Positions 2,165 through 58,879 of a stretch of 64,000 nucleotides of DNA are shown here, one piece after another (position 1 is the stretch's first letter; each line of letters opens with the position of its first letter). The stretch is from Guillardia theta CCMP2712 (lineage: Eukaryota > Protista > Cryptophyta), in the NCBI RefSeq assembly GCF_000315625.1, contig NW_005434659.1, positions 917,607 through 981,606 of the forward strand, written 5' to 3'. The translations under genes and the position numbers were made by a program. Under the pieces are notes generated by a model, which was not told the origin of the DNA, did no database searches, and saw nothing but the letters and a program-made list of their open reading frames with translations.

Positions 2165-3702
2165 TCAATCTGGGCAACAACACGTCTCAGCTCTGAAAAC
2201 ATGTAGTACGCGCAAAACATCACTGATCACCTCCATATCGACTTGAAAATCGTTCATGAGCTCATTTGACGTCCTAAAGTCTCCCATCTCCCTTGCAAAT
2301 GGCCTGCACATTTCAGGATTTTCCCTCTGAACACGATCAAACTCCTCAGGTGAGACCTGCACAAACAAGAAACTTGAGAGGCGAGATGAAACGTGGCGAA
2401 GGGAAAGAGACAACAGCGAGGTGTGTTAGAGAGCGAAGGAAGCTAGGCAGTGGGAGGGAGGACGACAGGAGGGAGTATAACACTCACAGGGTTAAAGTAG
2501 TAGAGCTGATTCAGAACACGTCCTCGTCCGTCAAATTGACGGCATTGCGACAACTTGCAGAAGATGCAACCCTTTGGCTTCTCTGACCAAATATCCTTCA
2601 CACGATAATAACGCTCTAGCAGGACATCGTTGGCGTGAAAGGCACCCTCAATCGTCTTGCAGAATTGATCCAACTCAGTCATGTAGAACGGAATGTCCTT
2701 TGCAGCAAATCGAGTCAGAAGCTCTTCTTTGTGCAATCCTGTCAGCTTGGTCATTGAATTTGTCACGCACACATCTTTCCTCCTTGACTCCTCAGGGTCG
2801 TATCTGATACGGACACAGGCAGAACCGTGAAGAGAAGAGAAATTTTCCAGGGCACTAATCTCTGAGTCTTCACAATTGCTCAGATTGCTTGCATTGTCAT
2901 TCTCAAGGAGGTGAATGTTATGCCTTGCAGTAGAAATCCCATCATCCTTCAGCACAAACATGTTCTCCAGAAATCTTACTCCTTCCTTCAGCATATCTTG
3001 CAACTTTGGAGGCATCGTCAGAAACATCTTGAGGTTCTGGCTAGAGTTGAATCCGAACTCGTTGAATCTCTTAACCAGAGCAGTGGAACCAGTGAAGATA
3101 CCCTCCAGGGCCTGACCACATTCAATCCCAAAGGAGGCGGTGTTGGCCTTGAAAGCCAGAGGTCGGTCCACTTGTTCTATAGGGCTCACACTCTTGTTGA
3201 TTTCCGTGGGAGGACTTGGCACAGGCGACATCGGGCTCTGCTGATTGACTGGTGAATCCTTGGGCTGACTGGTGTCTTCATGAGAGGAGTCAACGCAAAG
3301 ATGCGTTCTCCCTCTCTTACAACACCGTTTACAAGGCCTCTCATCGTCACATCTTTCCTTCAGCCGGCGGCATGGCTCGCAAGCCTTGGAAACCTGCTTC
3401 CTTGATTCTGGTTTATCCTTTGCCCAGTCAGTGCAAGTACTCGCTATGCCCCTGGCAAGGCAGCGACTGCAAGGCCGTGTGTTGTCACATTTTGTCTTCA
3501 GTCTCCTGCAATTTCCACATGCTCGTAACACACAAAAAGCAGATCTGTTCAACTTCTGGTTTGAGGAATTCTGTTTTACATCCGATGGTGATAGTTGTGA
3601 TTCAATGTCCTGAGGTAAAAACTGACTCATGCTCCCAAACAGACTCATGCCAAGGAGCTCGACGACACTCGTTGCTGGATCATCTGCGCAGCACAAATTC
3701 AA
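2165..3702 (-). CDS. Transcription factor with two Zn(II)2Cys6 binuclear clusters and a C-terminal PAS-like region
   Basis: [29 protein letters not shown] and [29 protein letters not shown] both fit Cx2Cx6Cx5-6Cx2Cx8C. An intron at about 2357-2487 joins the last exon [13 protein letters not shown]...CCCPD*. Confidence 0.85.
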
Positions 3703-20749: not shown

Positions 20750-24457
<3,708 letters not shown>

Positions 24458-24594
24458 GAGCCCAGCAGGCTCCGAGCAGAACGAGCCGACGAGGTTGTTC
24501 AGCTGGGAATTGACAGGGAAGCCTTCACAGCACGAGGGTTTGACAAGTTTGAGGGTTTTAGCTGGGGTGTGAAAGAATAAACGAGTCAGCTGGA

Positions 24595-26454
24595 CTATGA
24601 GAGGTGCTGGGAAAGCCAGAGTTGCTGCTGCTGGGGGAAGGAGGCGAAGACTTCTCGCATCGGCTCCGCGTACTCCTTGTGCAGGTGACTGATGTAAGAC
24701 ATCATCCCCACCTTAGTCTGCATACAAGTCAGCCTCCTCCTCCTCCTCCTCCTCCTCCTCCTCCTCCTCTTCCTCTTCCTCCTCCTCTTCCTCCTCGTTC
24801 CCTCCTCCTCACCTCCTCCTTCAAGTTCTTCGCGTTCGCCTCGTCAGACAGCAGCGTCACAAAACCGGCGACGGACTTGCCGAGGAAGGGGTGGAGGACC
24901 TCCGGGGAGAGCCTGTAGACGGCGAGGATGCAGGAGGAAACAACCTCGTTCTCCGCCGCATCGCCATGCAGCGGCAGATTCTCAACGAGGACACCAANNN
25001 NNNNNNNNNNNNNNNNNNNNNNNNNNNNNNNNNNNNNNNNNNNNNNNNNNNNNNNNNNNNNNNNNNNNNNNNNNNNNNNNNNNNNNNNNNNNNNNNNNNN
25101 NNNNNNNNNNNNNNNNNNNNNNNNNNNNNNNNNNNNNNNNNNNNNNNNNNNNNNNNNNNNNNNNNNNNNNNNNNNNNNNNNNNNNNNNNNNNNNNNNNNN
25201 NNNNNNNNNNNNNNNNNNNNNNNNNNNNNNNNNNNNNNNNNNNNNNNNNNNNNNNNNNNNNNNNNNNNNNNNNNNNNNNNNNNNNNNNNNNNNNNNNNNN
25301 NNNNNNNNNNNNNNNNNNNNNNNNNNNNNNNNNNNNNNNNNNNNNNNNNNNNNNNNNNNNNNNNNNNNNNNNNNNNNNNNNNNNNNNNNNNNNNNNNNNN
25401 NNNNNNNNNNNNNNNNNNNNNNNNNNNNNNNNNNNNNNNNNNNNNNNNNNNNNNNNNNNNNNNNNNNNNNNNNNNNNNNNNNNNNNNNNNNNNNNNNNNN
25501 NNNNNNNNNNNNNNNNNNNNNNNNNNNNNNNNNNNNNNNNNNNNNNNNNNNNNNNNNNNNNNNNNNNNNNNNNNNNNNNNNNNNNNNNNNNNNNNNNNNN
25601 NNNNNNNNNNNNNNNNNNNNNNNNNNNNNNNNNNNNNNNNNNNNNNNNNNNNNNNNNNNNNNNNNNNNNNNNNNNNNNNNNNNNNNNNNNNNNNNNNNNN
25701 NACGTCCCGTTCGTTGTCAATGTCTAAGTCTCACCATGTGGAAAGGTTGTCACCGTCTCAGCCTCTTCCAGTTTTGTAGGTAGCCATAGGATAAGTTTGA
25801 CAATGCATTGGTGGTCGTCATCCCTCCTCCTCCTCCTCCTCCTCCTCCTCCTCCTCCTCCTCCTCCTCCTCCTCCTCCTCCTCCTCCTCCTCCTCCTCCT
25901 CCTTCTCTCCAACACTCCTCCCCTCCCTCTCCAATCTCGTTCTCTCCTCTCGCCTTCCTCACCGATGGCCATGAGACGGTCAGAAGCTTGACGAGAAGGT
26001 TTCAGGTACTTCTGCAGGCTCGGGTAGATGCCTTCAAAGTAACCGCTGCAGACACGTCAGTCTCCTCCTCGTCACCATCCTCTCTCCTCTCTTCTCCTCC
26101 TTTCTTTCCTCTTTCCTCTTTCCTCTTTCCTCTTTCCTCTTTCCTCTTTCCTCTCTTCTTTCCTCTCTCTGCTCTTTACCTGAATTCTTGGCCATAAACG
26201 GACGCAACAACTCCAAGAAGATCCGCAACCGCATCAATGAGAACCTGAAAATTCCTTAGACTTCCTCCTTCTCCTCCTCCTCNNNNNNNNNNNNNNNNNN
26301 NNNNNNNNNNNNNNNNNNNNNNNNNNNNNNNNNNNNNNNNNNNNNNNNNNNNNNNNNNNNNNNNNNNNNNNNNNNNNNNNNNAGGACGAAGAACGAGGAC
26401 AGAGAGGATTGAGTGTACAAGGACGAGAAAGGATGGAAAAATTGGGAAAGAGGA

Positions 26455-53884: not shown

Positions 53885-56800
53885 ATGAGAGATTTGATTC
53901 TTCTTCTTCTGATCTTTCACCCCATTCCATCAATGGCACAAAGTCAAGTATCATGCGGAGATTGCACCTTCACAATCTCCGCGGACGGAGTGTTGACAAG
54001 ACAAGCTGCTTGCGGCACAGGATGCACCTCGTTGGACTTATACAGCAAGCGAATATCTCAGATCTCGGACCCCGACGTTTTCAAGGGACTGACTCAGCTT
54101 CAATACCTTGGGTTGGCTGGCAACTCCCTTACGAGTTTGCCATCAGGAGTCTTCGACGGCCTCACCAGCATAACATCCCTGAACCTGCGAATCAACAGAC
54201 TCACGTCATTGCCAGCAGCAGTGTTCGACCAGCTTGTCAAACTTGAGTATCTCTACCTAGACAACAACCGGCTCACCAGCCTTGCAGCAAGAGTTTTCGA
54301 TGCCAACTCGAAGCTATGGATGCTATGGATCTACAACAATGACCTTACGAGCCTGCCGGCAGGGTTGTTCAACAATCTTTCACGGCTTAACATATTGTAT
54401 CTTCAAGGCAACCAGATCTCATCACTTCCTTCAAGGCTCTTCGACCATCTCTCAAGTTTGAGGGTTTTGATCTTGTACGACCTGCAGATGTCGCAGGCAC
54501 CGAATGAACTCTTCCAAAACCTAACGAGCTTGGAGCAGCTCTACGTCTCAACGTTCGATTATGTCCAATGCGGGGGCTGCACGTTTGTGGTGAGTAGCAG
54601 TGGGGAGCTCATGCGACAAGGCACATGCAGCCATGACTGCCAAAACTCCTTACCGCTATCATCACGAGGGATCAAGTCGTTGACGAGCAACGTGTTCCAA
54701 GGGATGCCGTCACTGAGCCTTCTTGATCTATCTTACAATGACTTGACGGAGATACCGGCTGGGGTGTTTGACAGCCTTACCCAAGTATTTAATTTGTTCT
54801 TTCTTTGGAACAAGCTGTCAGCTCTACCTCCGGGTGTCTTCAACAACAACAAGAACCTTGCATACCTTCGGCTTGGAGGTAACATGCTCCAGTCGCTACC
54901 AGCTGGATTGTTCGATAATCTTTCAAACCTTAACGAAGCCTCTCTGTACTACAACAAGCTTGAGAGCCTTCCGGACAGGCTCTTTGACAGTCTGACAAGG
55001 CTGCGTTACATCGACCTTTATGGAAATTACTTGAAAAACTACCCGACAAACATCTTTCACAACCTTCCCAGCCTCATCTCCCTCGGGCTAAGGTACAATA
55101 GCATCTCTTGCATCCCTTCCTCAGCATTTGCGAGTCTTCCTGCCAACATTTACATTGACGTTACACACAATCTTATCCAGTGTCATCGCGCATGGCCATC
55201 CTGGGTACAAACAGAACAAGGCCTGCCAAACTGTGTTGAATATGCAAACGATGCTTTTACAGATGATTGCCTTTGCAAACTCGGATACTACAACAAAACA
55301 AAGGGAAGTTGTGATGCATGTACACAAGGAACCTACAAGAGCGTCATCGGCGATGGATTCTGCTCAGCATGCATGAGAGGAACTTGGTCAAAAAGCACAG
55401 CATCTGCGTGCACAAACTGTGAGCTTGGAAGCTTCAGCAGAGTGCCCGGGGCGTCGGCGTGCGGAGCATGCGCGGCGGGGAGCTACAGCGGAGTGCCCGG
55501 GGCGTCGGCGTGCGGAGCATGCGCGGCGGGGAGCTACAGCAGAGAGCCCGGGGCGTCGGCGTGCGGAGCATGCGCGGCGGGGAGCTACAGCAGAGAGCCC
55601 GGGGCGTCGGCGTGCGGAGCATGCGCGGCGGGGAGCTACAGCGGAGTGCCCGGGGCGTCGGCGTGCGGAGCATGCGCGGCGGGGAGCTACAGCGGAGAGC
55701 CCGGGGCGTTGGCGTGCGGAGCATGCGCGGCGGGGAGCTACAGCAGAGAGCCCGGGGCGTCGGCGTGCGGAGCATGCGCGGCGGGGAGCTACAGCAGAGT
55801 GCCCGGGGCGTCGGCGTGCGGAGCATGCGCGGCGGGGAGCTACAGCGGAGTGCCCGGGGCGTCGGCGTGCGGAGCATGCGCGGCGGGGAGCTACAGCAGA
55901 GAGCCCGGGGCGTCGGCGTGCGGAGCATGCGCGGCGGGGAGCTACAGCGGAGAGCCCGGGGCGTCGGCGTGCGGAGCATGCGCGGCGGGGAGCTACAGCG
56001 GAGTGCCCGGGGCGTCGGCGTGCGGAGCATGCGCGGCGGGGAGCTACAGCAGAGAGCCCGGGGCGTCGGCGTGCGGAGCATGCGCGGCGGGGAGCTACAG
56101 CAGAGAGCCCGGGGCGTCGGCATGCGCAGTGTGTGGTTTGGGACATTTTTCAACTTTTCTTGGATCTTCGGTTTGCTGGGAGTGCAGATGTCAAATGAAT
56201 TATCGCGTAATCGATGGATGTAAGGACGGCATCTCAAACTTTCAATGTAAAGAATGTGAAGCTAACGCGTACAGCGATGGCACAATGACTTCGTGTGTCT
56301 GTCCAGCTGGTCACACAAACACAGGGCCGTCCTGCTCAAAGTGTGCTCCAGGAACGTCTAAGTCAAGTATAGGAGCTGCACCCTGCTCCGTTTGCCTATC
56401 AGGGACATGGTCTACGGAAGCATCATCGGTTTGTGCTGCATGTCCGGCAGGTAGCTTCTCATCAGTCAGCAAGGCATCGGCATGTACAGGTTGTCCCATC
56501 GGTTTCTTCTCTTCTCTTGCTGGCGGCACGACATGTTCGGCGTGCCAGCCAGGAAGCTTCTCAGGCGACGGAGGCGCATCCTATTGCTCGACGTGTCCAG
56601 CAGGAACCTACTCCAGCACGGCAGGGTCCACCACGTGCACAGCCTGTGCTCCAGGAACTTATTCAGCTGGCTCAAAGGCCTCGAGCTGCTTGGCGTGTGC
56701 GGAAGGATCTACATCTGGGATAGCTTCGTTTGCGTGTAGCGAGAGCATTCAAGCTGCGATACCTTCGGAGTTGTCCTCCAAGTCTCAAGTGCAGCCGACC

Positions 56801-58081
56801 GCGACTCCATCGGGAACTTCGGCTTCTTTGCTGACGGCGGTTGGAACGTCAGTGTCGGGATGCCTCGTCCTGGGGATGATTGGATGTTATTGCTGGTGGA
56901 TCAAAAACACAGTCAACACTCGCACTGCAGATGAGGCCTCGCATGCCATGTCAAAGGAAAGCTTAGGGTGCGAGTTGGTGATCGAGAACGGATCTCAAGA
57001 CTGCAAGTTGAGCCTTGTCGACATTTCTAATTTCCTTATCGATGTGCTTCCCCATGGCACAGGTACTTACAAGTCCATGTTCAAAGCGCAATGGAGGCAA
57101 AAGACGCCTGATGGTAACGAGACGTTCATGGACGTTGCAATGCTTGAGTTCAGAGGCAAAGAACACGACGACATGGAGACCTTCCGCAATGAAGTAGAGA
57201 TCATGCGGCTGATTGGGAATCATCCGCACTTGGCAAAGTTTTACTGCCCGACCCAGTTGAGAAACGGTCACTATGCCTTAGTGATGGAGTATGCTCCGGA
57301 AGGTTCTCTAGACAATCTCCTTCAGAAAGCTCAGCAGAGCAGCAAGGCTGTCAGCGACGAGGTGCTACTGCAGGTCGGCAAGCAGGTGTGCGACGGGATG
57401 ATGCAGCTGTCAGTGTACAACGTAGTCCACGGGGACCTCGCCTGCCGCAACATCCTGGTGTTCAGCTTTGACTACTACGACAGGAAGCTCATTCGAGTCA
57501 AGATCTCAGACTTTGGACTTTCTTTGCGATTGACCGCCGCGGCCCCGGCCAGCCTCAGCCGTGAAAGCCGTTATGGCGAGTTGACTGGTGGGCCTCTGCG
57601 ATGGATGGCTCCAGAGGTGATGACGAGGAGGGAGTTCTCAGAGAAGAGCGACATCTGGTCCTACGGCGTCACCCTGTGGGAGCTGTGGACTAACTGCTCT
57701 GTCGTGCCGTACGCGTCCGTCACAGAGGACGAGGAGCTGAGACGAAAGATCATCCTGGGCCACTTGCTCGAGAAGCCGGAGTGCTGCAACCCGAGATTCT
57801 ACGAGATCATGCAGGCATGTTGGAGACCAGACCCGTCCGAGCGACCGAGTTTCACGCAGGTGAAGGAGCAGGTTGAAGATGCTTTCCTGATGTTGCACTC
57901 CAAAGCCCCTGCAGACACCAACAAGGGGGGCGAGTGTCAGATCTGCCTGTCTGACCAGGTCGATTACGCTATCTTGCCTTGCGGCCACAAGTGCCTCTGC
58001 TCTGAGTGCAGGAGCGTTGTAGGGACACAGTGCCCTCTGTGCCGCAGGGACATCCGGGAGATCGTCCGAATCTTCGACTGA
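53885..58081 (+). CDS. Receptor-like kinase: signal peptide, LRRs, Cys-rich (GCC2/ephrin-receptor-like) repeats, TM, tyrosine-kinase-type domain and C-terminal RING finger (1398 aa, intronless)
   Basis: MRDLILLLLIF signal; 24-aa LRRs (LxxLxLxxNxLxxLPxGVF); CxxCxxGxYS repeats; TM LLTAVGTSVSGCLVLGMIGCYCWWI; HGDLACRN, KISDFG, PLRWMAPE and SDIWSYGVTLWE; RING CQICLS...LPCGHKCLCSEC...CPLCR. Confidence 0.95.
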   Translation: MRDLILLLLIFHPIPSMAQSQVSCGDCTFTISADGVLTRQAACGTGCTSLDLYSKRISQISDPDVFKGLTQLQYLGLAGNSLTSLPSGVFDGLTSITSLNLRINRLTSLPAAVFDQLVKLEYLYLDNNRLTSLAARVFDANSKLWMLWIYNNDLTSLPAGLFNNLSRLNILYLQGNQISSLPSRLFDHLSSLRVLILYDLQMSQAPNELFQNLTSLEQLYVSTFDYVQCGGCTFVVSSSGELMRQGTCSHDCQNSLPLSSRGIKSLTSNVFQGMPSLSLLDLSYNDLTEIPAGVFDSLTQVFNLFFLWNKLSALPPGVFNNNKNLAYLRLGGNMLQSLPAGLFDNLSNLNEASLYYNKLESLPDRLFDSLTRLRYIDLYGNYLKNYPTNIFHNLPSLISLGLRYNSISCIPSSAFASLPANIYIDVTHNLIQCHRAWPSWVQTEQGLPNCVEYANDAFTDDCLCKLGYYNKTKGSCDACTQGTYKSVIGDGFCSACMRGTWSKSTASACTNCELGSFSRVPGASACGACAAGSYSGVPGASACGACAAGSYSREPGASACGACAAGSYSREPGASACGACAAGSYSGVPGASACGACAAGSYSGEPGALACGACAAGSYSREPGASACGACAAGSYSRVPGASACGACAAGSYSGVPGASACGACAAGSYSREPGASACGACAAGSYSGEPGASACGACAAGSYSGVPGASACGACAAGSYSREPGASACGACAAGSYSREPGASACAVCGLGHFSTFLGSSVCWECRCQMNYRVIDGCKDGISNFQCKECEANAYSDGTMTSCVCPAGHTNTGPSCSKCAPGTSKSSIGAAPCSVCLSGTWSTEASSVCAACPAGSFSSVSKASACTGCPIGFFSSLAGGTTCSACQPGSFSGDGGASYCSTCPAGTYSSTAGSTTCTACAPGTYSAGSKASSCLACAEGSTSGIASFACSESIQAAIPSELSSKSQVQPTATPSGTSASLLTAVGTSVSGCLVLGMIGCYCWWIKNTVNTRTADEASHAMSKESLGCELVIENGSQDCKLSLVDISNFLIDVLPHGTGTYKSMFKAQWRQKTPDGNETFMDVAMLEFRGKEHDDMETFRNEVEIMRLIGNHPHLAKFYCPTQLRNGHYALVMEYAPEGSLDNLLQKAQQSSKAVSDEVLLQVGKQVCDGMMQLSVYNVVHGDLACRNILVFSFDYYDRKLIRVKISDFGLSLRLTAAAPASLSRESRYGELTGGPLRWMAPEVMTRREFSEKSDIWSYGVTLWELWTNCSVVPYASVTEDEELRRKIILGHLLEKPECCNPRFYEIMQACWRPDPSERPSFTQVKEQVEDAFLMLHSKAPADTNKGGECQICLSDQVDYAILPCGHKCLCSECRSVVGTQCPLCRRDIREIVRIFD
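55437..56127 (+). repeat. Coding 51-bp (17-aa) tandem array, 14 units
   Basis: Unit S[R/G][V/E]PGASACGACAAGSY, near-identical at the DNA level. Confidence 0.97.
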
Positions 58082-58288: not shown

Positions 58289-58402
58289 AGCAAGAGCAAG
58301 AGCAAGAGCAAGAGCAAGAGCAAGAGCAAGAGCAAGAGCAAGAGCATGAGCAAGAGCATGAGCATGAGCATGAGCATGAGCATGAGCATGAGCATGAGCA
58401 AG
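58289..58402. repeat. Compound (AGCAAG)n/(AGCATG)n hexanucleotide repeat
   Basis: Directly visible tandem units. Confidence 0.93.
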
Positions 58403-58879
58403 AGTTTCACAAGATGATTATTCGGATGTATGCTGAATGAACGCTAAGATGCTCAGCTGTGTCGTCCAGCTTCTCCCCAACAGCGATCCTCCACGTCGAG
58501 CGTCTGTTGGAAGAGATTCCACCATAATAGATGGTGATTGGGCCGATCCGAGCGCCTTCAGTCATTGCGTCTTGCTGAGGCACTTCAACGTTGCAGTACA
58601 TCTGCTGCTTCAGTCGTGTGTTACTACCGGAACTAGAGCCCCTCCAGAGGCATCGTCTTCTTGCGACCTCCAGGTAAGCAATGCTGATAGTGTCCGATGG
58701 GTTGGCATCTTCAACCGTCACGCTGATCACTCTGCTGCGGCTGCGGCATCGCTCCACGAATCCGTCGGTCCCATGTGATGCTCGCAGCCCTCACGGTTGA
58801 CCAACGCAGAGGAGCTCCTCTGCGTTGGTCAAGTTAGGTTTGCAACTGTCAGCCGCGCTAGAGATGCTCCCATCTCTTC

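What the first reader, a model, noticed from the sequence alone, without database searches (positions are those of the whole stretch)
53885..58081. LRR / Cys-repeat receptor tyrosine-kinase-like protein with a built-in RING E3 ligase
Seen: one intronless 4.2-kb ORF with signal peptide, two LRR blocks, a long Cys-rich stalk, one TM helix, a kinase with TK-type signatures (HGDLACRN resembling HRDLAARN, PLRWMAPE, SDIWSYGVTLWE) and a terminal C3HC4 RING of the IAP/MDM2/MGRN type. Established: receptor tyrosine kinases are chiefly holozoan and recruit a separate RING ligase (Cbl); plant LRR receptor kinases use Pelle/IRAK-type domains; 24-aa 'LPxGVFD' LRRs are the type used in lamprey VLRs. Inference: a self-contained sense-phosphorylate-ubiquitinate receptor, possibly part of an undescribed algal non-self or immune recognition family with variable ectodomains.
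Basis: partly seen in the sequence, partly recalled or inferred. Interest (0 to 1): 0.9.

Follow-up and report, generated by a model that had tools for sequence, protein, structure and literature searches.

The report
Algal LRR receptor kinase with RING
A cryptophyte alga (Guillardia theta) carries one intact 4.2-kb gene for a membrane receptor joining a leucine-rich-repeat sensor, a tyrosine-kinase-type domain whose ATP-binding lysine has moved to the glycine loop (as in WNK kinases), and a ubiquitin-ligase RING finger; it belongs to an uncharacterised protist family.

Summary
Window 53885-58081 (+) is one uninterrupted 1398-aa ORF. In order it encodes a signal peptide, two cap+LRR modules (about 14 repeats of 24 aa) and a stalk of 25 CxxCxxG units. 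Fourteen of those units are a 97%-identical 51-bp tandem array. Then come one TM helix, a kinase and a C-terminal C3HC4 RING.

The kinase is tyrosine-kinase-type by motifs, by best sequence and fold matches, and by a tree (96/95 support with animal TKs; only four TKL references).

This WNK-like swap is shared by a 97/97-supported clade: about 21 G. theta kinase-RING paralogues, Hanusia, Rhodomonas, Telonema, marine metagenome proteins and bdelloid-rotifer U-box kinases.

The RING keeps all zinc ligands, the residues that in characterised RINGs contact the E2, and an IAP/MDM2-like tail. A homodimer model passes its controls.

Limits:
- No RNA reads were found.
- SH2 domains were not detected in the genome.
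- Tyr specificity, E3 activity and any immune role are untested.
- The public gene model covers only the last 317 aa.
- The scan had already noted paralogues elsewhere in this genome.

Verdict: a new variant of protist receptor kinases.

The parts
53885..53938 (+). Signal peptide (aa 1-18, MRDLILLLLIFHPIPSMA)
   Evidence: Hydrophobic N-terminus directly at the first ATG, with a stop 5 codons upstream. The cleavage site is inferred.
53948..54550 (+). LRR module 1: 4-Cys N-cap plus about 7 LRRs of exactly 24 aa (aa 22-222)
   Evidence: Pfam LRR_8/LRR_4/LRR_5; 24-aa register
54563..55249 (+). LRR module 2: second 4-Cys cap plus about 7-8 LRRs and a Cys-containing C-cap (aa 227-455), an internal duplication of module 1
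55310..56737 (+). Cys-rich stalk: 25 CxxCxxG units of 16-17 aa (Ephrin_rec_like / TNFR-like), aa 476-951
   Evidence: Pfam Ephrin_rec_like 117.7 bits, 9 stretches; unit list
55430..56126 (+). Recently expanded 51-bp tandem array (13.7 copies, 97% identical) inside the stalk. Apart from one site in the first copy and one S-to-L change, copies differ at only two nucleotide sites; all changes are nonsynonymous (R/G, E/V)
   Evidence: TRF; copy table. Short-read contigs of run X1 break here.
56822..56902 (+). Single transmembrane helix (aa ~980-1006), preceded by an S/T/P-rich linker and followed by a basic KNTVNTR stretch
   Evidence: Highest Kyte-Doolittle 19-mer in the protein
57044..57883 (+). 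Tyrosine-kinase-type kinase domain (aa 1054-1333). G-loop GTGTYK with K1063; beta3 VAML with L1087 in place of Lys; HGDLACRN (1182-1189, non-RD); DFG 1209-1211; PLRWMAPE
57071..57073 (+). Codon of K1063, the relocated (WNK-like) candidate catalytic lysine
   Evidence: The column is K in nearly all of the 40-row clade and G in nearly all TK/TKL references. Alignment to EGFR/MER.
57929..58078 (+). C-terminal C3HC4 RING (zf-C3HC4_3; C1351...C1386), Arg R1387 after the last Cys, and IAP/MDM2-like tail ...IVRIFD
   Evidence: Pfam 44.5-47.7 bits; family conservation; homodimer model

Best explanation
This is a type-I single-pass receptor of Guillardia theta. A double LRR ectodomain is held on a long Cys-knot stalk. 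The cytoplasmic part is a 'kinase-RING cassette'. Its kinase is tyrosine-kinase-type, and the ATP-anchoring lysine has moved from strand beta3 to the glycine loop, the solution otherwise known from WNK kinases but reached independently here. About 15 residues after the kinase comes a C-terminal RING of the dimerising IAP/MDM2 type.

Proposed mechanism (inferred): ligand binding to the LRRs brings two receptors together. This allows trans-autophosphorylation of the kinases and lets the two RING tails form the active dimer that recruits an E2~ubiquitin. Sensing, phosphorylation and ubiquitination of the receptor and/or nearby substrates are thus coupled in one polypeptide.

The cassette is a reusable output module. 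In the same genome and in other protists it is attached to other sensors: LRR, Cys stalk, short TM ectodomains, ankyrin, TPR, WWE, ubiquitin-like. Which residue the kinase phosphorylates is not known.
For: Shown:
- The ORF is intact and the domain order is as stated.
- TK-type motifs occur across about 21 G. theta kinase-RING loci and 29 relatives.
- All top PDB sequence hits and Foldseek hits to a pLDDT-89 model are tyrosine kinases.
- In the careful ML tree the family, the rotifer and metagenomic U-box kinases and further G. theta kinases form one clade (97/97). That clade joins animal TKs (96/95), excluding plant RLKs, MAP3K13 and amoebozoan TK-like kinases.
- In that clade the G-loop third position is basic (K in 36, R in 1) in 37 of the 39 rows that cover it, and the beta3 K is lost in 38 of 39. 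All reference kinases that cover these columns keep the beta3 Lys, and all but two keep the third Gly.
- The catalytic D, N, DFG, APE and the alphaC Glu are retained.
- WNK1 is active with a beta2 lysine replacing the beta3 lysine (PMC4718504).
- The RING has all eight ligands, and the CPxCR Arg is at least 90% conserved.
- RING homodimer model: score 0.41 against a best control of 0.00. The interface uses tail residues 1394-1398; runs agree in at least 78% of contacts; partner pLDDT is at least 72. The tool's mark was reached by 21/30 solved homodimers and 0/23 solved monomers. On eukaryotes the figures were 17/29 and 0/30, and the pass may come from memory of solved RING dimers.
- A 65%-identical orthologue with kinase+RING is present in the Hanusia phi transcriptome.
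Against: - No RNA-seq read of run X5 (about 6% of the run sampled) lies on the gene.
- This copy is non-RD (HGD) and lacks the beta3 Lys, so it could be catalytically weak or dead.
- No coordinates were available to check that K1063 reaches the active site.
- No SH2 domain and only weak PTP-like hits were found in the genome, which argues against classical pTyr signalling.
- The Hanusia model does not end at the conserved tail.
- TKL sampling in the tree is sparse (4 sequences), and references were drawn from similarity hits.
- Ligand, substrates, dimerisation and E3 activity are all inferred.
Confidence: 0.55

Rival explanations
1. Pseudokinase receptor. The kinase fold is a catalytically dead dimerisation or allosteric scaffold, and the RING is the only enzymatic output.
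For: The beta3 Lys is absent (L1087) and HRD reads HGD in this copy. Some paralogues are clearly degenerate: HRELAARS at C239/C122 and HCNLAAHN at C29.
Against: The G-loop Lys is almost invariant across a deep clade, and D1184, N1189, DFG, APE and the alphaC Glu are retained. WNK1 shows this arrangement can be active.
Confidence: 0.2
2. A Ser/Thr or dual-specificity kinase that only looks like a TK. The clade is a protist offshoot using TK-like motifs without pTyr signalling.
For: No SH2 hit and only weak partial PTP-like hits in the 87-Mb genome. The activation loop is rich in Ser/Thr with a single Tyr. Monophyly of the animal TKs apart from this clade has only 59/73 support, and TKL sampling is thin.
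Against: The HRDLAARN and PxRWMAPE signatures are those that distinguish TKs from Ser/Thr kinases (Hanks-Hunter criteria, own knowledge), and they are met family-wide. The nearest solved sequences and structures are all TKs. The SH2 search is exon-by-exon and had no positive control.
Confidence: 0.35
3. Immune or non-self pattern-recognition receptor. Variable LRR ectodomains detect microbes or viruses, with non-RD kinase signalling.
For: The gene combines an LRR ectodomain with a non-RD kinase; own knowledge is that non-RD kinases are enriched among plant and animal innate immune receptors. The same LRR type is hugely expanded in the genome. The stalk repeat expanded recently.
Against: There are no expression or challenge data. 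Only 3-4 of about 21 cassette genes have LRR or Cys-rich ectodomains. The LRR type is generic. The gene sits among housekeeping genes, not in a receptor cluster.
Confidence: 0.2
4. A silent or decaying gene, or an assembly artefact of the repeat region, so that the full-length protein is never made.
For: Zero RNA reads. The public annotation models only the last 317 aa (P0121). Short-read contigs break at the 51-bp array, and one contig has an extra G at 57394.
Against: A 4.2-kb open frame with every domain in register and catalytic and zinc residues intact is not expected of a pseudogene. The extra G lies in a GGG run and is a likely read error. Contigs on both sides match at 100%. The orthologue is transcribed in Hanusia.
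Confidence: 0.08

Closest known systems
Holozoan receptor tyrosine kinases (e.g. EGFR, FGFR, TIE2, Eph) with the separate RING ligase Cbl
   Same: Type-I topology; a Cys-rich (ephrin-receptor/TNFR-like) ectodomain element; TK-type catalytic and P+1 loops. These are the nearest solved sequences and folds, and the gene groups with TKs in the tree.
   Different: The beta3 Lys is lost and the G-loop Lys gained. The E3 is built in rather than recruited through SH2/pTyr. No SH2 was found in the genome. The clade is distinct (97/97) from the animal TK families.
WNK ('with no lysine') kinases
   Same: The catalytic lysine is supplied from the glycine-loop/beta2 strand while the beta3 position is non-basic.
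   Different: There is no specific homology. The N-lobe alone matches TIE2, EGFR and MER, not WNK. The catalytic loop is HxDLAxRN, not the Ser/Thr type. The resemblance is convergent.
Protist and plant LRR transmembrane kinases (oomycete LRR-TMKs, plant LRR-RLKs; PMC10463195)
   Same: The layout is LRR ectodomain, single TM helix, cytoplasmic kinase.
   Different: The kinase is not RLK/Pelle; plant RLKs fall outside in the tree. The C-terminal RING is an addition. The survey does not mention Guillardia, cryptophytes or RING.
Cryptophyte phytochrome-kinase hybrids (PEK) with C-terminal kinase and RING (PMC4525182)
   Same: Same organism group and same logic: a sensor, then a kinase, then a RING in one protein.
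   Different: The G. theta PEK locus (C31) has a canonical Ser/Thr kinase (GEGAFG, AVK, HRDLKPDN) and an internal classical RING. It scores only 41 and 25 bits against the cassette profile. It is an independent fusion.
IAP/MDM2/RNF4-type dimeric RING E3s; Arabidopsis KEG and plant U-box kinases (own knowledge)
   Same: zf-C3HC4_3 RING at the extreme C-terminus with an aromatic at -2 or -3. The model predicts tail-mediated homodimerisation. The kinase and the E3 are in one chain.
   Different: Here the RING hangs on a TM receptor with a TK-type kinase. KEG and the PUB kinases are cytosolic, with Ser/Thr kinases and a different domain order.
Bdelloid-rotifer U-box-kinase proteins (uncharacterised database entries, e.g. 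P0293, P0309, P0330)
   Same: Same kinase clade, same lysine relocation, even the same HGDLACRN loop, and fusion to an E3 domain.
   Different: The E3 is an N-terminal U-box rather than a C-terminal RING. The examples seen are about 380 aa and lack an ectodomain.

Membership tests
Tyrosine kinase (TK) group | Catalytic loop HRDLAARN/HRDLRAAN instead of HRDLKxxN | tested here: met
   HGDLACRN in this gene; HRDLAARN in most paralogues and relatives
Tyrosine kinase (TK) group | P+1 loop P-[IVL]-[KR]-W-x-APE and the CW...RPxF motif | tested here: met
   PLRWMAPE and ACWRPDPSERPSF
Tyrosine kinase (TK) group | Phylogenetic placement with TKs rather than TKL or other groups | tested here: met
   96/95 support for the clade plus 16 animal TKs, excluding 4 TKL and 6 protist kinases. 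TKL sampling is sparse, so this is provisional.
Tyrosine kinase (TK) group | Canonical beta3 (VAIK) lysine | tested here: not met
   VAML, L1087; family-wide L/Q/M
Tyrosine kinase (TK) group | Phosphorylates tyrosine | not testable with these tools
   Needs a kinase assay. The genomic context (no SH2 hit, weak PTP hits) gives no support.
WNK kinases | Lysine in the G-loop/beta2 substituting for an absent beta3 lysine | tested here: met
   K1063 and L1087, conserved across the clade. WNK1 precedent in PMC4718504.
WNK kinases | Sequence homology to the WNK kinase domain | tested here: not met
   N-lobe and whole-domain searches return only TKs (plus B-Raf for the N-lobe), never WNK, among the best 60
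Plant-type LRR-RLK (RLK/Pelle) | Kinase domain of the RLK/Pelle/IRAK clade | tested here: not met
   Plant PBL8 and S-RLK kinases fall outside the 96/95 branch
RING E3 ligase, zf-C3HC4_3 (IAP/MDM2 type) | Eight zinc ligands with C3HC4 spacing, over the Pfam threshold | tested here: met
   44.5-47.7 bits against a cut-off of 27. Ligands are invariant or nearly invariant in 28 of 30 relatives.
RING E3 ligase, zf-C3HC4_3 (IAP/MDM2 type) | C-terminal tail-mediated dimer and a 'linchpin' Arg after the last Cys | tested here: inconclusive
   R1387 is conserved in at least 90% of relatives. Homodimer model: 0.41 against control 0.00, with the tail in the interface. It is a model only and may reflect memory of solved RING dimers.
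RING E3 ligase, zf-C3HC4_3 (IAP/MDM2 type) | Ubiquitin-ligase activity | not testable with these tools
   Needs an E1/E2/Ub assay
Cryptophyte PEK (phytochrome-kinase-RING) | Homologous kinase-RING output module | tested here: not met
   The PEK locus on C31 has HRDLKPDN, a canonical Lys and a different RING. It scores 41 and 25 bits against the cassette HMM.

The most novel reading that the evidence does not exclude
The lysine-relocated, TK-type kinases fused to RING or U-box domains form an old, unrecognised eukaryotic signalling module outside the holozoan TK system. The module spans cryptophytes, Telonema, other marine protists and bdelloid rotifers. In it, one polypeptide writes both a phosphate (possibly on tyrosine) and ubiquitin. 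Its LRR-bearing members, such as this gene, would act as surface pattern-recognition receptors whose dimerisation switches on both activities.
Probability: 0.2. Interest if true: 0.85.

Novelty: new variant of a known kind. Interest (0 to 1): 0.62.

Why it matters
Tyrosine-kinase receptors are usually treated as a holozoan invention, and WNK is the textbook active kinase with a relocated catalytic lysine. This gene and its clade show TK-type kinases outside animals that made the same lysine move independently. They are also hard-wired to E3 ligase domains.

If the kinase is active, this gives a second natural test of how the beta3 lysine can be replaced. It also gives a minimal sense-phosphorylate-ubiquitinate receptor that could be dissected or engineered. 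It bears on how phosphotyrosine-like signalling evolved without SH2 readers.

Practically, the public gene model is truncated to 317 aa, so architecture-based surveys miss this receptor.

Tried and rejected
- WNK ancestry of the N-lobe is rejected. N-lobe-only PDB searches give TIE2, EGFR, MER and Eph, not WNK.
- Identity with the published cryptophyte PEK kinase-RING module is rejected. The kinase and the RING type both differ.
- Expression: one RNA-seq run (X5, raw reads, about 6% sampled) and two presumed RNA contig sets gave no coverage. Run X1 covers the gene and its intergenic flanks and looks genomic. So there is no transcript evidence either way for G. theta.
- The look-up of encoding contigs for the public model P0121 returned nothing; records of this genome are withheld.
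- A findings look-up near the window returned nothing.
- A regex and phmmer survey of 8 kb upstream of 20 paralogues found receptor-type exons at only 3 loci. Other N-terminal domains were not resolved because the exon structure is unknown.
- A VLR-specific LRR type is rejected. The same LRR_8 type is found in bacteria, animals and hundreds of metagenomic proteins.
- The geometry of K1063 in the AF2 model could not be inspected, because coordinates are not exposed.
- Literature searches for Guillardia or cryptophyte tyrosine kinases, HRDLAARN in algae, and rotifer U-box kinases found no description of this family.

Full report
**1. Observation**

The ORF listing shows a single ORF at 53885..58081 on the + strand, 1398 aa, starting at an ATG. 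The open frame is only 5 codons longer upstream (open frame 1403 aa), so the ATG with its hydrophobic leader is the likely start.

Pfam finds the following:
- LRR_8: 182.7 bits, seven stretches.
- Ephrin_rec_like: 117.7 bits, nine stretches.
- PK_Tyr_Ser-Thr: 198.4 bits, against 116.2 for the generic Pkinase model.
- zf-C3HC4_3: 44.5 bits, cut-off 27.

A script places the parts as follows:
- Leader at aa 1-18.
- Two modules, each a 4-Cys cap followed by LRRs in strict 24-aa register (aa 22-222 and 227-455).
- Twenty-five CxxCxxG units at aa 476-951.
- An S/T/P-rich linker.
- One hydrophobic helix at aa ~980-1006.
- The kinase at aa 1054-1333.
- The RING at aa 1349-1398, which ends the protein.

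Tandem Repeats Finder reports 13.7 copies of a 51-bp unit at 97% identity (55430-56126). Apart from one site in the first copy and one S-to-L change, the copies differ at only two nucleotide sites; all these changes alter the residue (R/G and E/V). This indicates a recent expansion.

**2. Organism and context**

The window is contig 15 of an 87.1-Mb, 669-contig genome. Paralogues carry the names 'GUITHDRAFT_... [Guillardia theta CCMP2712]', and the genome holds phytochromes.

The neighbouring ORFs are housekeeping genes: an acetate kinase/phosphotransacetylase fusion, an importin-beta, DUF1295, a PEP mutase, a RhoGAP and a Zn2Cys6 protein. The gene is therefore not part of a receptor cluster.

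The public protein for this locus (P0121) is only the last 317 aa. It starts at M1082, inside the kinase N-lobe. In the length class 769-2446 aa, no kinase with a C3HC4_3 RING was returned. The full architecture therefore appears absent from the protein sets searched.

**3. The kinase is TK-type**

- All 60 listed PDB sequence hits are tyrosine kinases, including EGFR, TYK2/JAK, FGFR, TIE2, ABL, CSK and RET.
- An AlphaFold2 model of kinase+RING built on a 30-sequence alignment has pLDDT 89.1 and pTM 0.80. Its 50 best Foldseek matches in the PDB are all tyrosine kinases, including JAK3, FGFR2, SYK, PDGFRA, EGFR, RET and FAK.
- The paralogues carry the canonical HRDLAARN and P-x-R-W-M-A-P-E motifs. 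This copy has HGDLACRN (non-RD) and PLRWMAPE.

A careful IQ-TREE analysis of 67 kinase domains gave these results:
- A 40-row clade has 97/97 support. It holds the cryptophyte kinase-RING family, further G. theta kinases, bdelloid-rotifer U-box kinases and metagenomic U-box kinases.
- That clade joins 16 animal TKs at 96/95. Plant RLKs, MAP3K13, and the Balamuthia, Planoprotostelium and other protist kinases fall outside.
- Whether the clade is sister to the animal TKs or nested among them is unresolved (59/73).
- Only four TKL references were available, all drawn from similarity hits, so the placement is provisional.

**4. The relocated lysine**

Alignments to EGFR, MER and TIE2 show two changes:
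- The VAIK lysine is Leu here (VAML, L1087).
- The third glycine of GxGxxG is Lys (GTGTYK, K1063).

Across the tree's alignment, the G-loop position is basic (K in 36, R in 1) in 37 of the 39 rows of the 97/97 clade that cover it. The beta3 position is L/Q/M/V/T/C in 38 of 39; the exception is a U-box-PARP protein, P0015, with the canonical G and K. All TK, TKL and other reference kinases that cover these columns keep the beta3 Lys, and all but two keep the third Gly. The catalytic Asp, Asn, DFG, APE and the alphaC Glu are retained.

[quoted passage not shown] N-lobe-only searches find TKs and never WNK, so the resemblance is convergent.

Some paralogues and the rotifer proteins have a Lys one residue after the beta3 position (VAVLK, ILLK), so a one-residue register shift cannot be excluded for them. 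This gene and most RING-family members have no Lys there.

I could not inspect model coordinates. That K1063 reaches the active site is an inference.

**5. The RING**

The sequence is C-x2-C-x11-C-x-H-x3-C-x2-C-x7-C-x2-C, followed by R and the tail DIREIVRIFD.

The eight ligands, the Pro before the last Cys pair and the Arg after the last Cys are invariant or at least 90% conserved in the family. In characterised RING E3s these residues contact the E2 and hold E2~Ub closed (own knowledge). Most members end one or two residues after an aromatic, as IAP, MDM2 and RNF4 RINGs do.

A two-copy complex prediction of aa 1335-1398 scored 0.41, with a best control of 0.00:
- The runs agreed in at least 78% of contacts, and partner pLDDT was at least 72.
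- The interface uses residues 1359-1369 and the tail 1394-1398.
- The tool's mark was reached by 21 of 30 proteins solved as homodimers and by 0 of 23 solved as monomers. On eukaryotes the figures were 17 of 29 and 0 of 30.
- Because similar RING dimers have been solved, the pass may be from memory. It shows likeness, not binding.

**6. The family**

The genome holds about 21 loci with kinase plus RING at 31-42% identity to this gene, among 87 kinase matches overall. Most are a terminal exon of about 350 aa.

Upstream of twenty of them, three loci showed receptor-type exons:
- C8 shows LRRs and a TM helix.
- C9 shows LRRs.
- C29 shows a Cys stalk plus TM, with a degenerate HCNLAAHN loop.

Outside G. 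theta the cassette occurs in several places:
- Hanusia phi: a transcriptome orthologue, 65% identical, with kinase and RING in one ORF.
- Rhodomonas abbreviata.
- Telonema subtile.
- Many marine metagenome proteins.

The N-terminal parts of these relatives vary. Some carry strong TM helices with short ectodomains; others carry ankyrin, TPR, WWE, ubiquitin-like or LRR_6 domains. The cassette is therefore a portable output module, and this gene is the longest and most elaborate version found.

The LRR type is generic. There are at least 151 matches in this genome, and the best outside matches are metagenomic, bacterial and slit-like animal proteins.

**7. Comparison with known systems**

- Protist LRR transmembrane kinases are a known kind, but the published cross-kingdom survey does not mention Guillardia, cryptophytes or RING (PMC10463195).
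- Cryptophyte phytochrome-kinase hybrids (PEK) are drawn with kinase and RING domains (PMC4525182). I located the G. theta locus on contig 31. Its kinase is an ordinary Ser/Thr type (GEGAFG, AVK, HRDLKPDN), and its RING is internal and of another type. It is therefore a parallel, independent fusion.
- I found no paper describing the lysine-relocated TK-type clade or the rotifer U-box kinases.
- The scan's own notes record two paralogous loci of this genome with the same reading. I reached the lysine relocation before seeing them.

**8. What weakens the functional reading**

- Laying reads gave no RNA-seq coverage from run X5 (about 6% of the run read). The contigs of run X1 cover the gene and its flanks and break at repeats, as genomic data would.
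- One X1 contig has an extra G at 57394, inside a GGG run. This is most likely a read error.
- No SH2 domain was detected in six-frame searches of the genome. The Y_phosphatase hits are weak and partial. The SH2 search had no positive control and works exon by exon, so it is a hint only.
- The Hanusia model runs on past the RING tail, possibly an artefact.
- Tyr specificity, E3 activity, dimerisation in vivo, the ligand and any immune role remain untested.

**9. Verdict**

The architecture is real and unusual. The best-supported reading is a single-pass LRR receptor whose output is a TK-type kinase with a WNK-like relocated lysine, coupled to a probably dimeric RING E3. The gene belongs to an uncharacterised protist family.

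I rate it a new variant of a known kind (protist receptor kinases), with interest 0.62.

Noticed in passing
window 21294-24572 (+): A 1092-aa ORF fuses the C-terminal half of an acetate kinase, AAA_26 and DRTGG domains, and a phosphate acetyltransferase (PTA_PTB, 349 bits). This is an ACK-PTA fusion in a eukaryotic alga. The N-terminal half of the acetate kinase must lie in an upstream exon.
   Followed up: no
window 58289-58404: A hexamer microsatellite (AGCAAG x 19.3, 96% matches) lies about 200 bp after the stop codon. Short-read contigs break there.
   Followed up: no
P0293, P0309, P0330, P0334 (bdelloid rotifers Rotaria, Adineta, Didymodactylos): A large rotifer family of U-box + kinase proteins of about 380 aa falls in the same kinase clade. 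It shares the G-loop lysine, the lost beta3 lysine and even HGDLACRN. I found no literature on it. Whether the link is common descent or horizontal transfer is open.
   Followed up: partly
G000:C31:36000-45999 (L021), + strand: The G. theta phytochrome (PEK-type) locus has PHY/PAS exons, then a canonical Ser/Thr kinase (HRDLKPDN) split by an intron, then an internal C3HC4 RING. This is an independent sensor-kinase-RING fusion in the same genome.
   Followed up: partly
G000:C29:672107-672955 (+) and C29:683382-684344 (-) (L048, L039): Two nearly identical kinase domains about 10 kb apart, in opposite orientation. The catalytic loop is degenerate (HCNLAAHN). In L039 the kinase follows a stalk with 22 Cys-repeat units and a TM helix, and a RING follows the kinase. 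These are likely pseudokinase receptors of the same family.
   Followed up: partly
G000:C47:318919-320697 (+): The closest LRR paralogue of the ectodomain (62% identity, 743-aa ORF) has no kinase hit on its contig. The LRR module therefore also occurs in non-kinase proteins. At least 151 LRR matches of this type are scattered in clusters (C104, C226, C249, C5, C13).
   Followed up: no
window 24001-26000: GC content drops to 0.37, against about 0.5-0.57 around it. Long ORFs overlap on both strands (24857-25779). This may be a low-complexity or repeat island between the ACK-PTA and importin genes.
   Followed up: no
window 57394: One contig of run X1 carries an extra G inside a GGG run of the kinase coding region. 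This would shift the frame. It is most likely a homopolymer read error of the 2011 data.
   Followed up: partly
window 2443-3702 (-): An ORF with a fungal-type Zn(2)-Cys(6) binuclear cluster domain (38.9 bits) in a cryptophyte.
   Followed up: no
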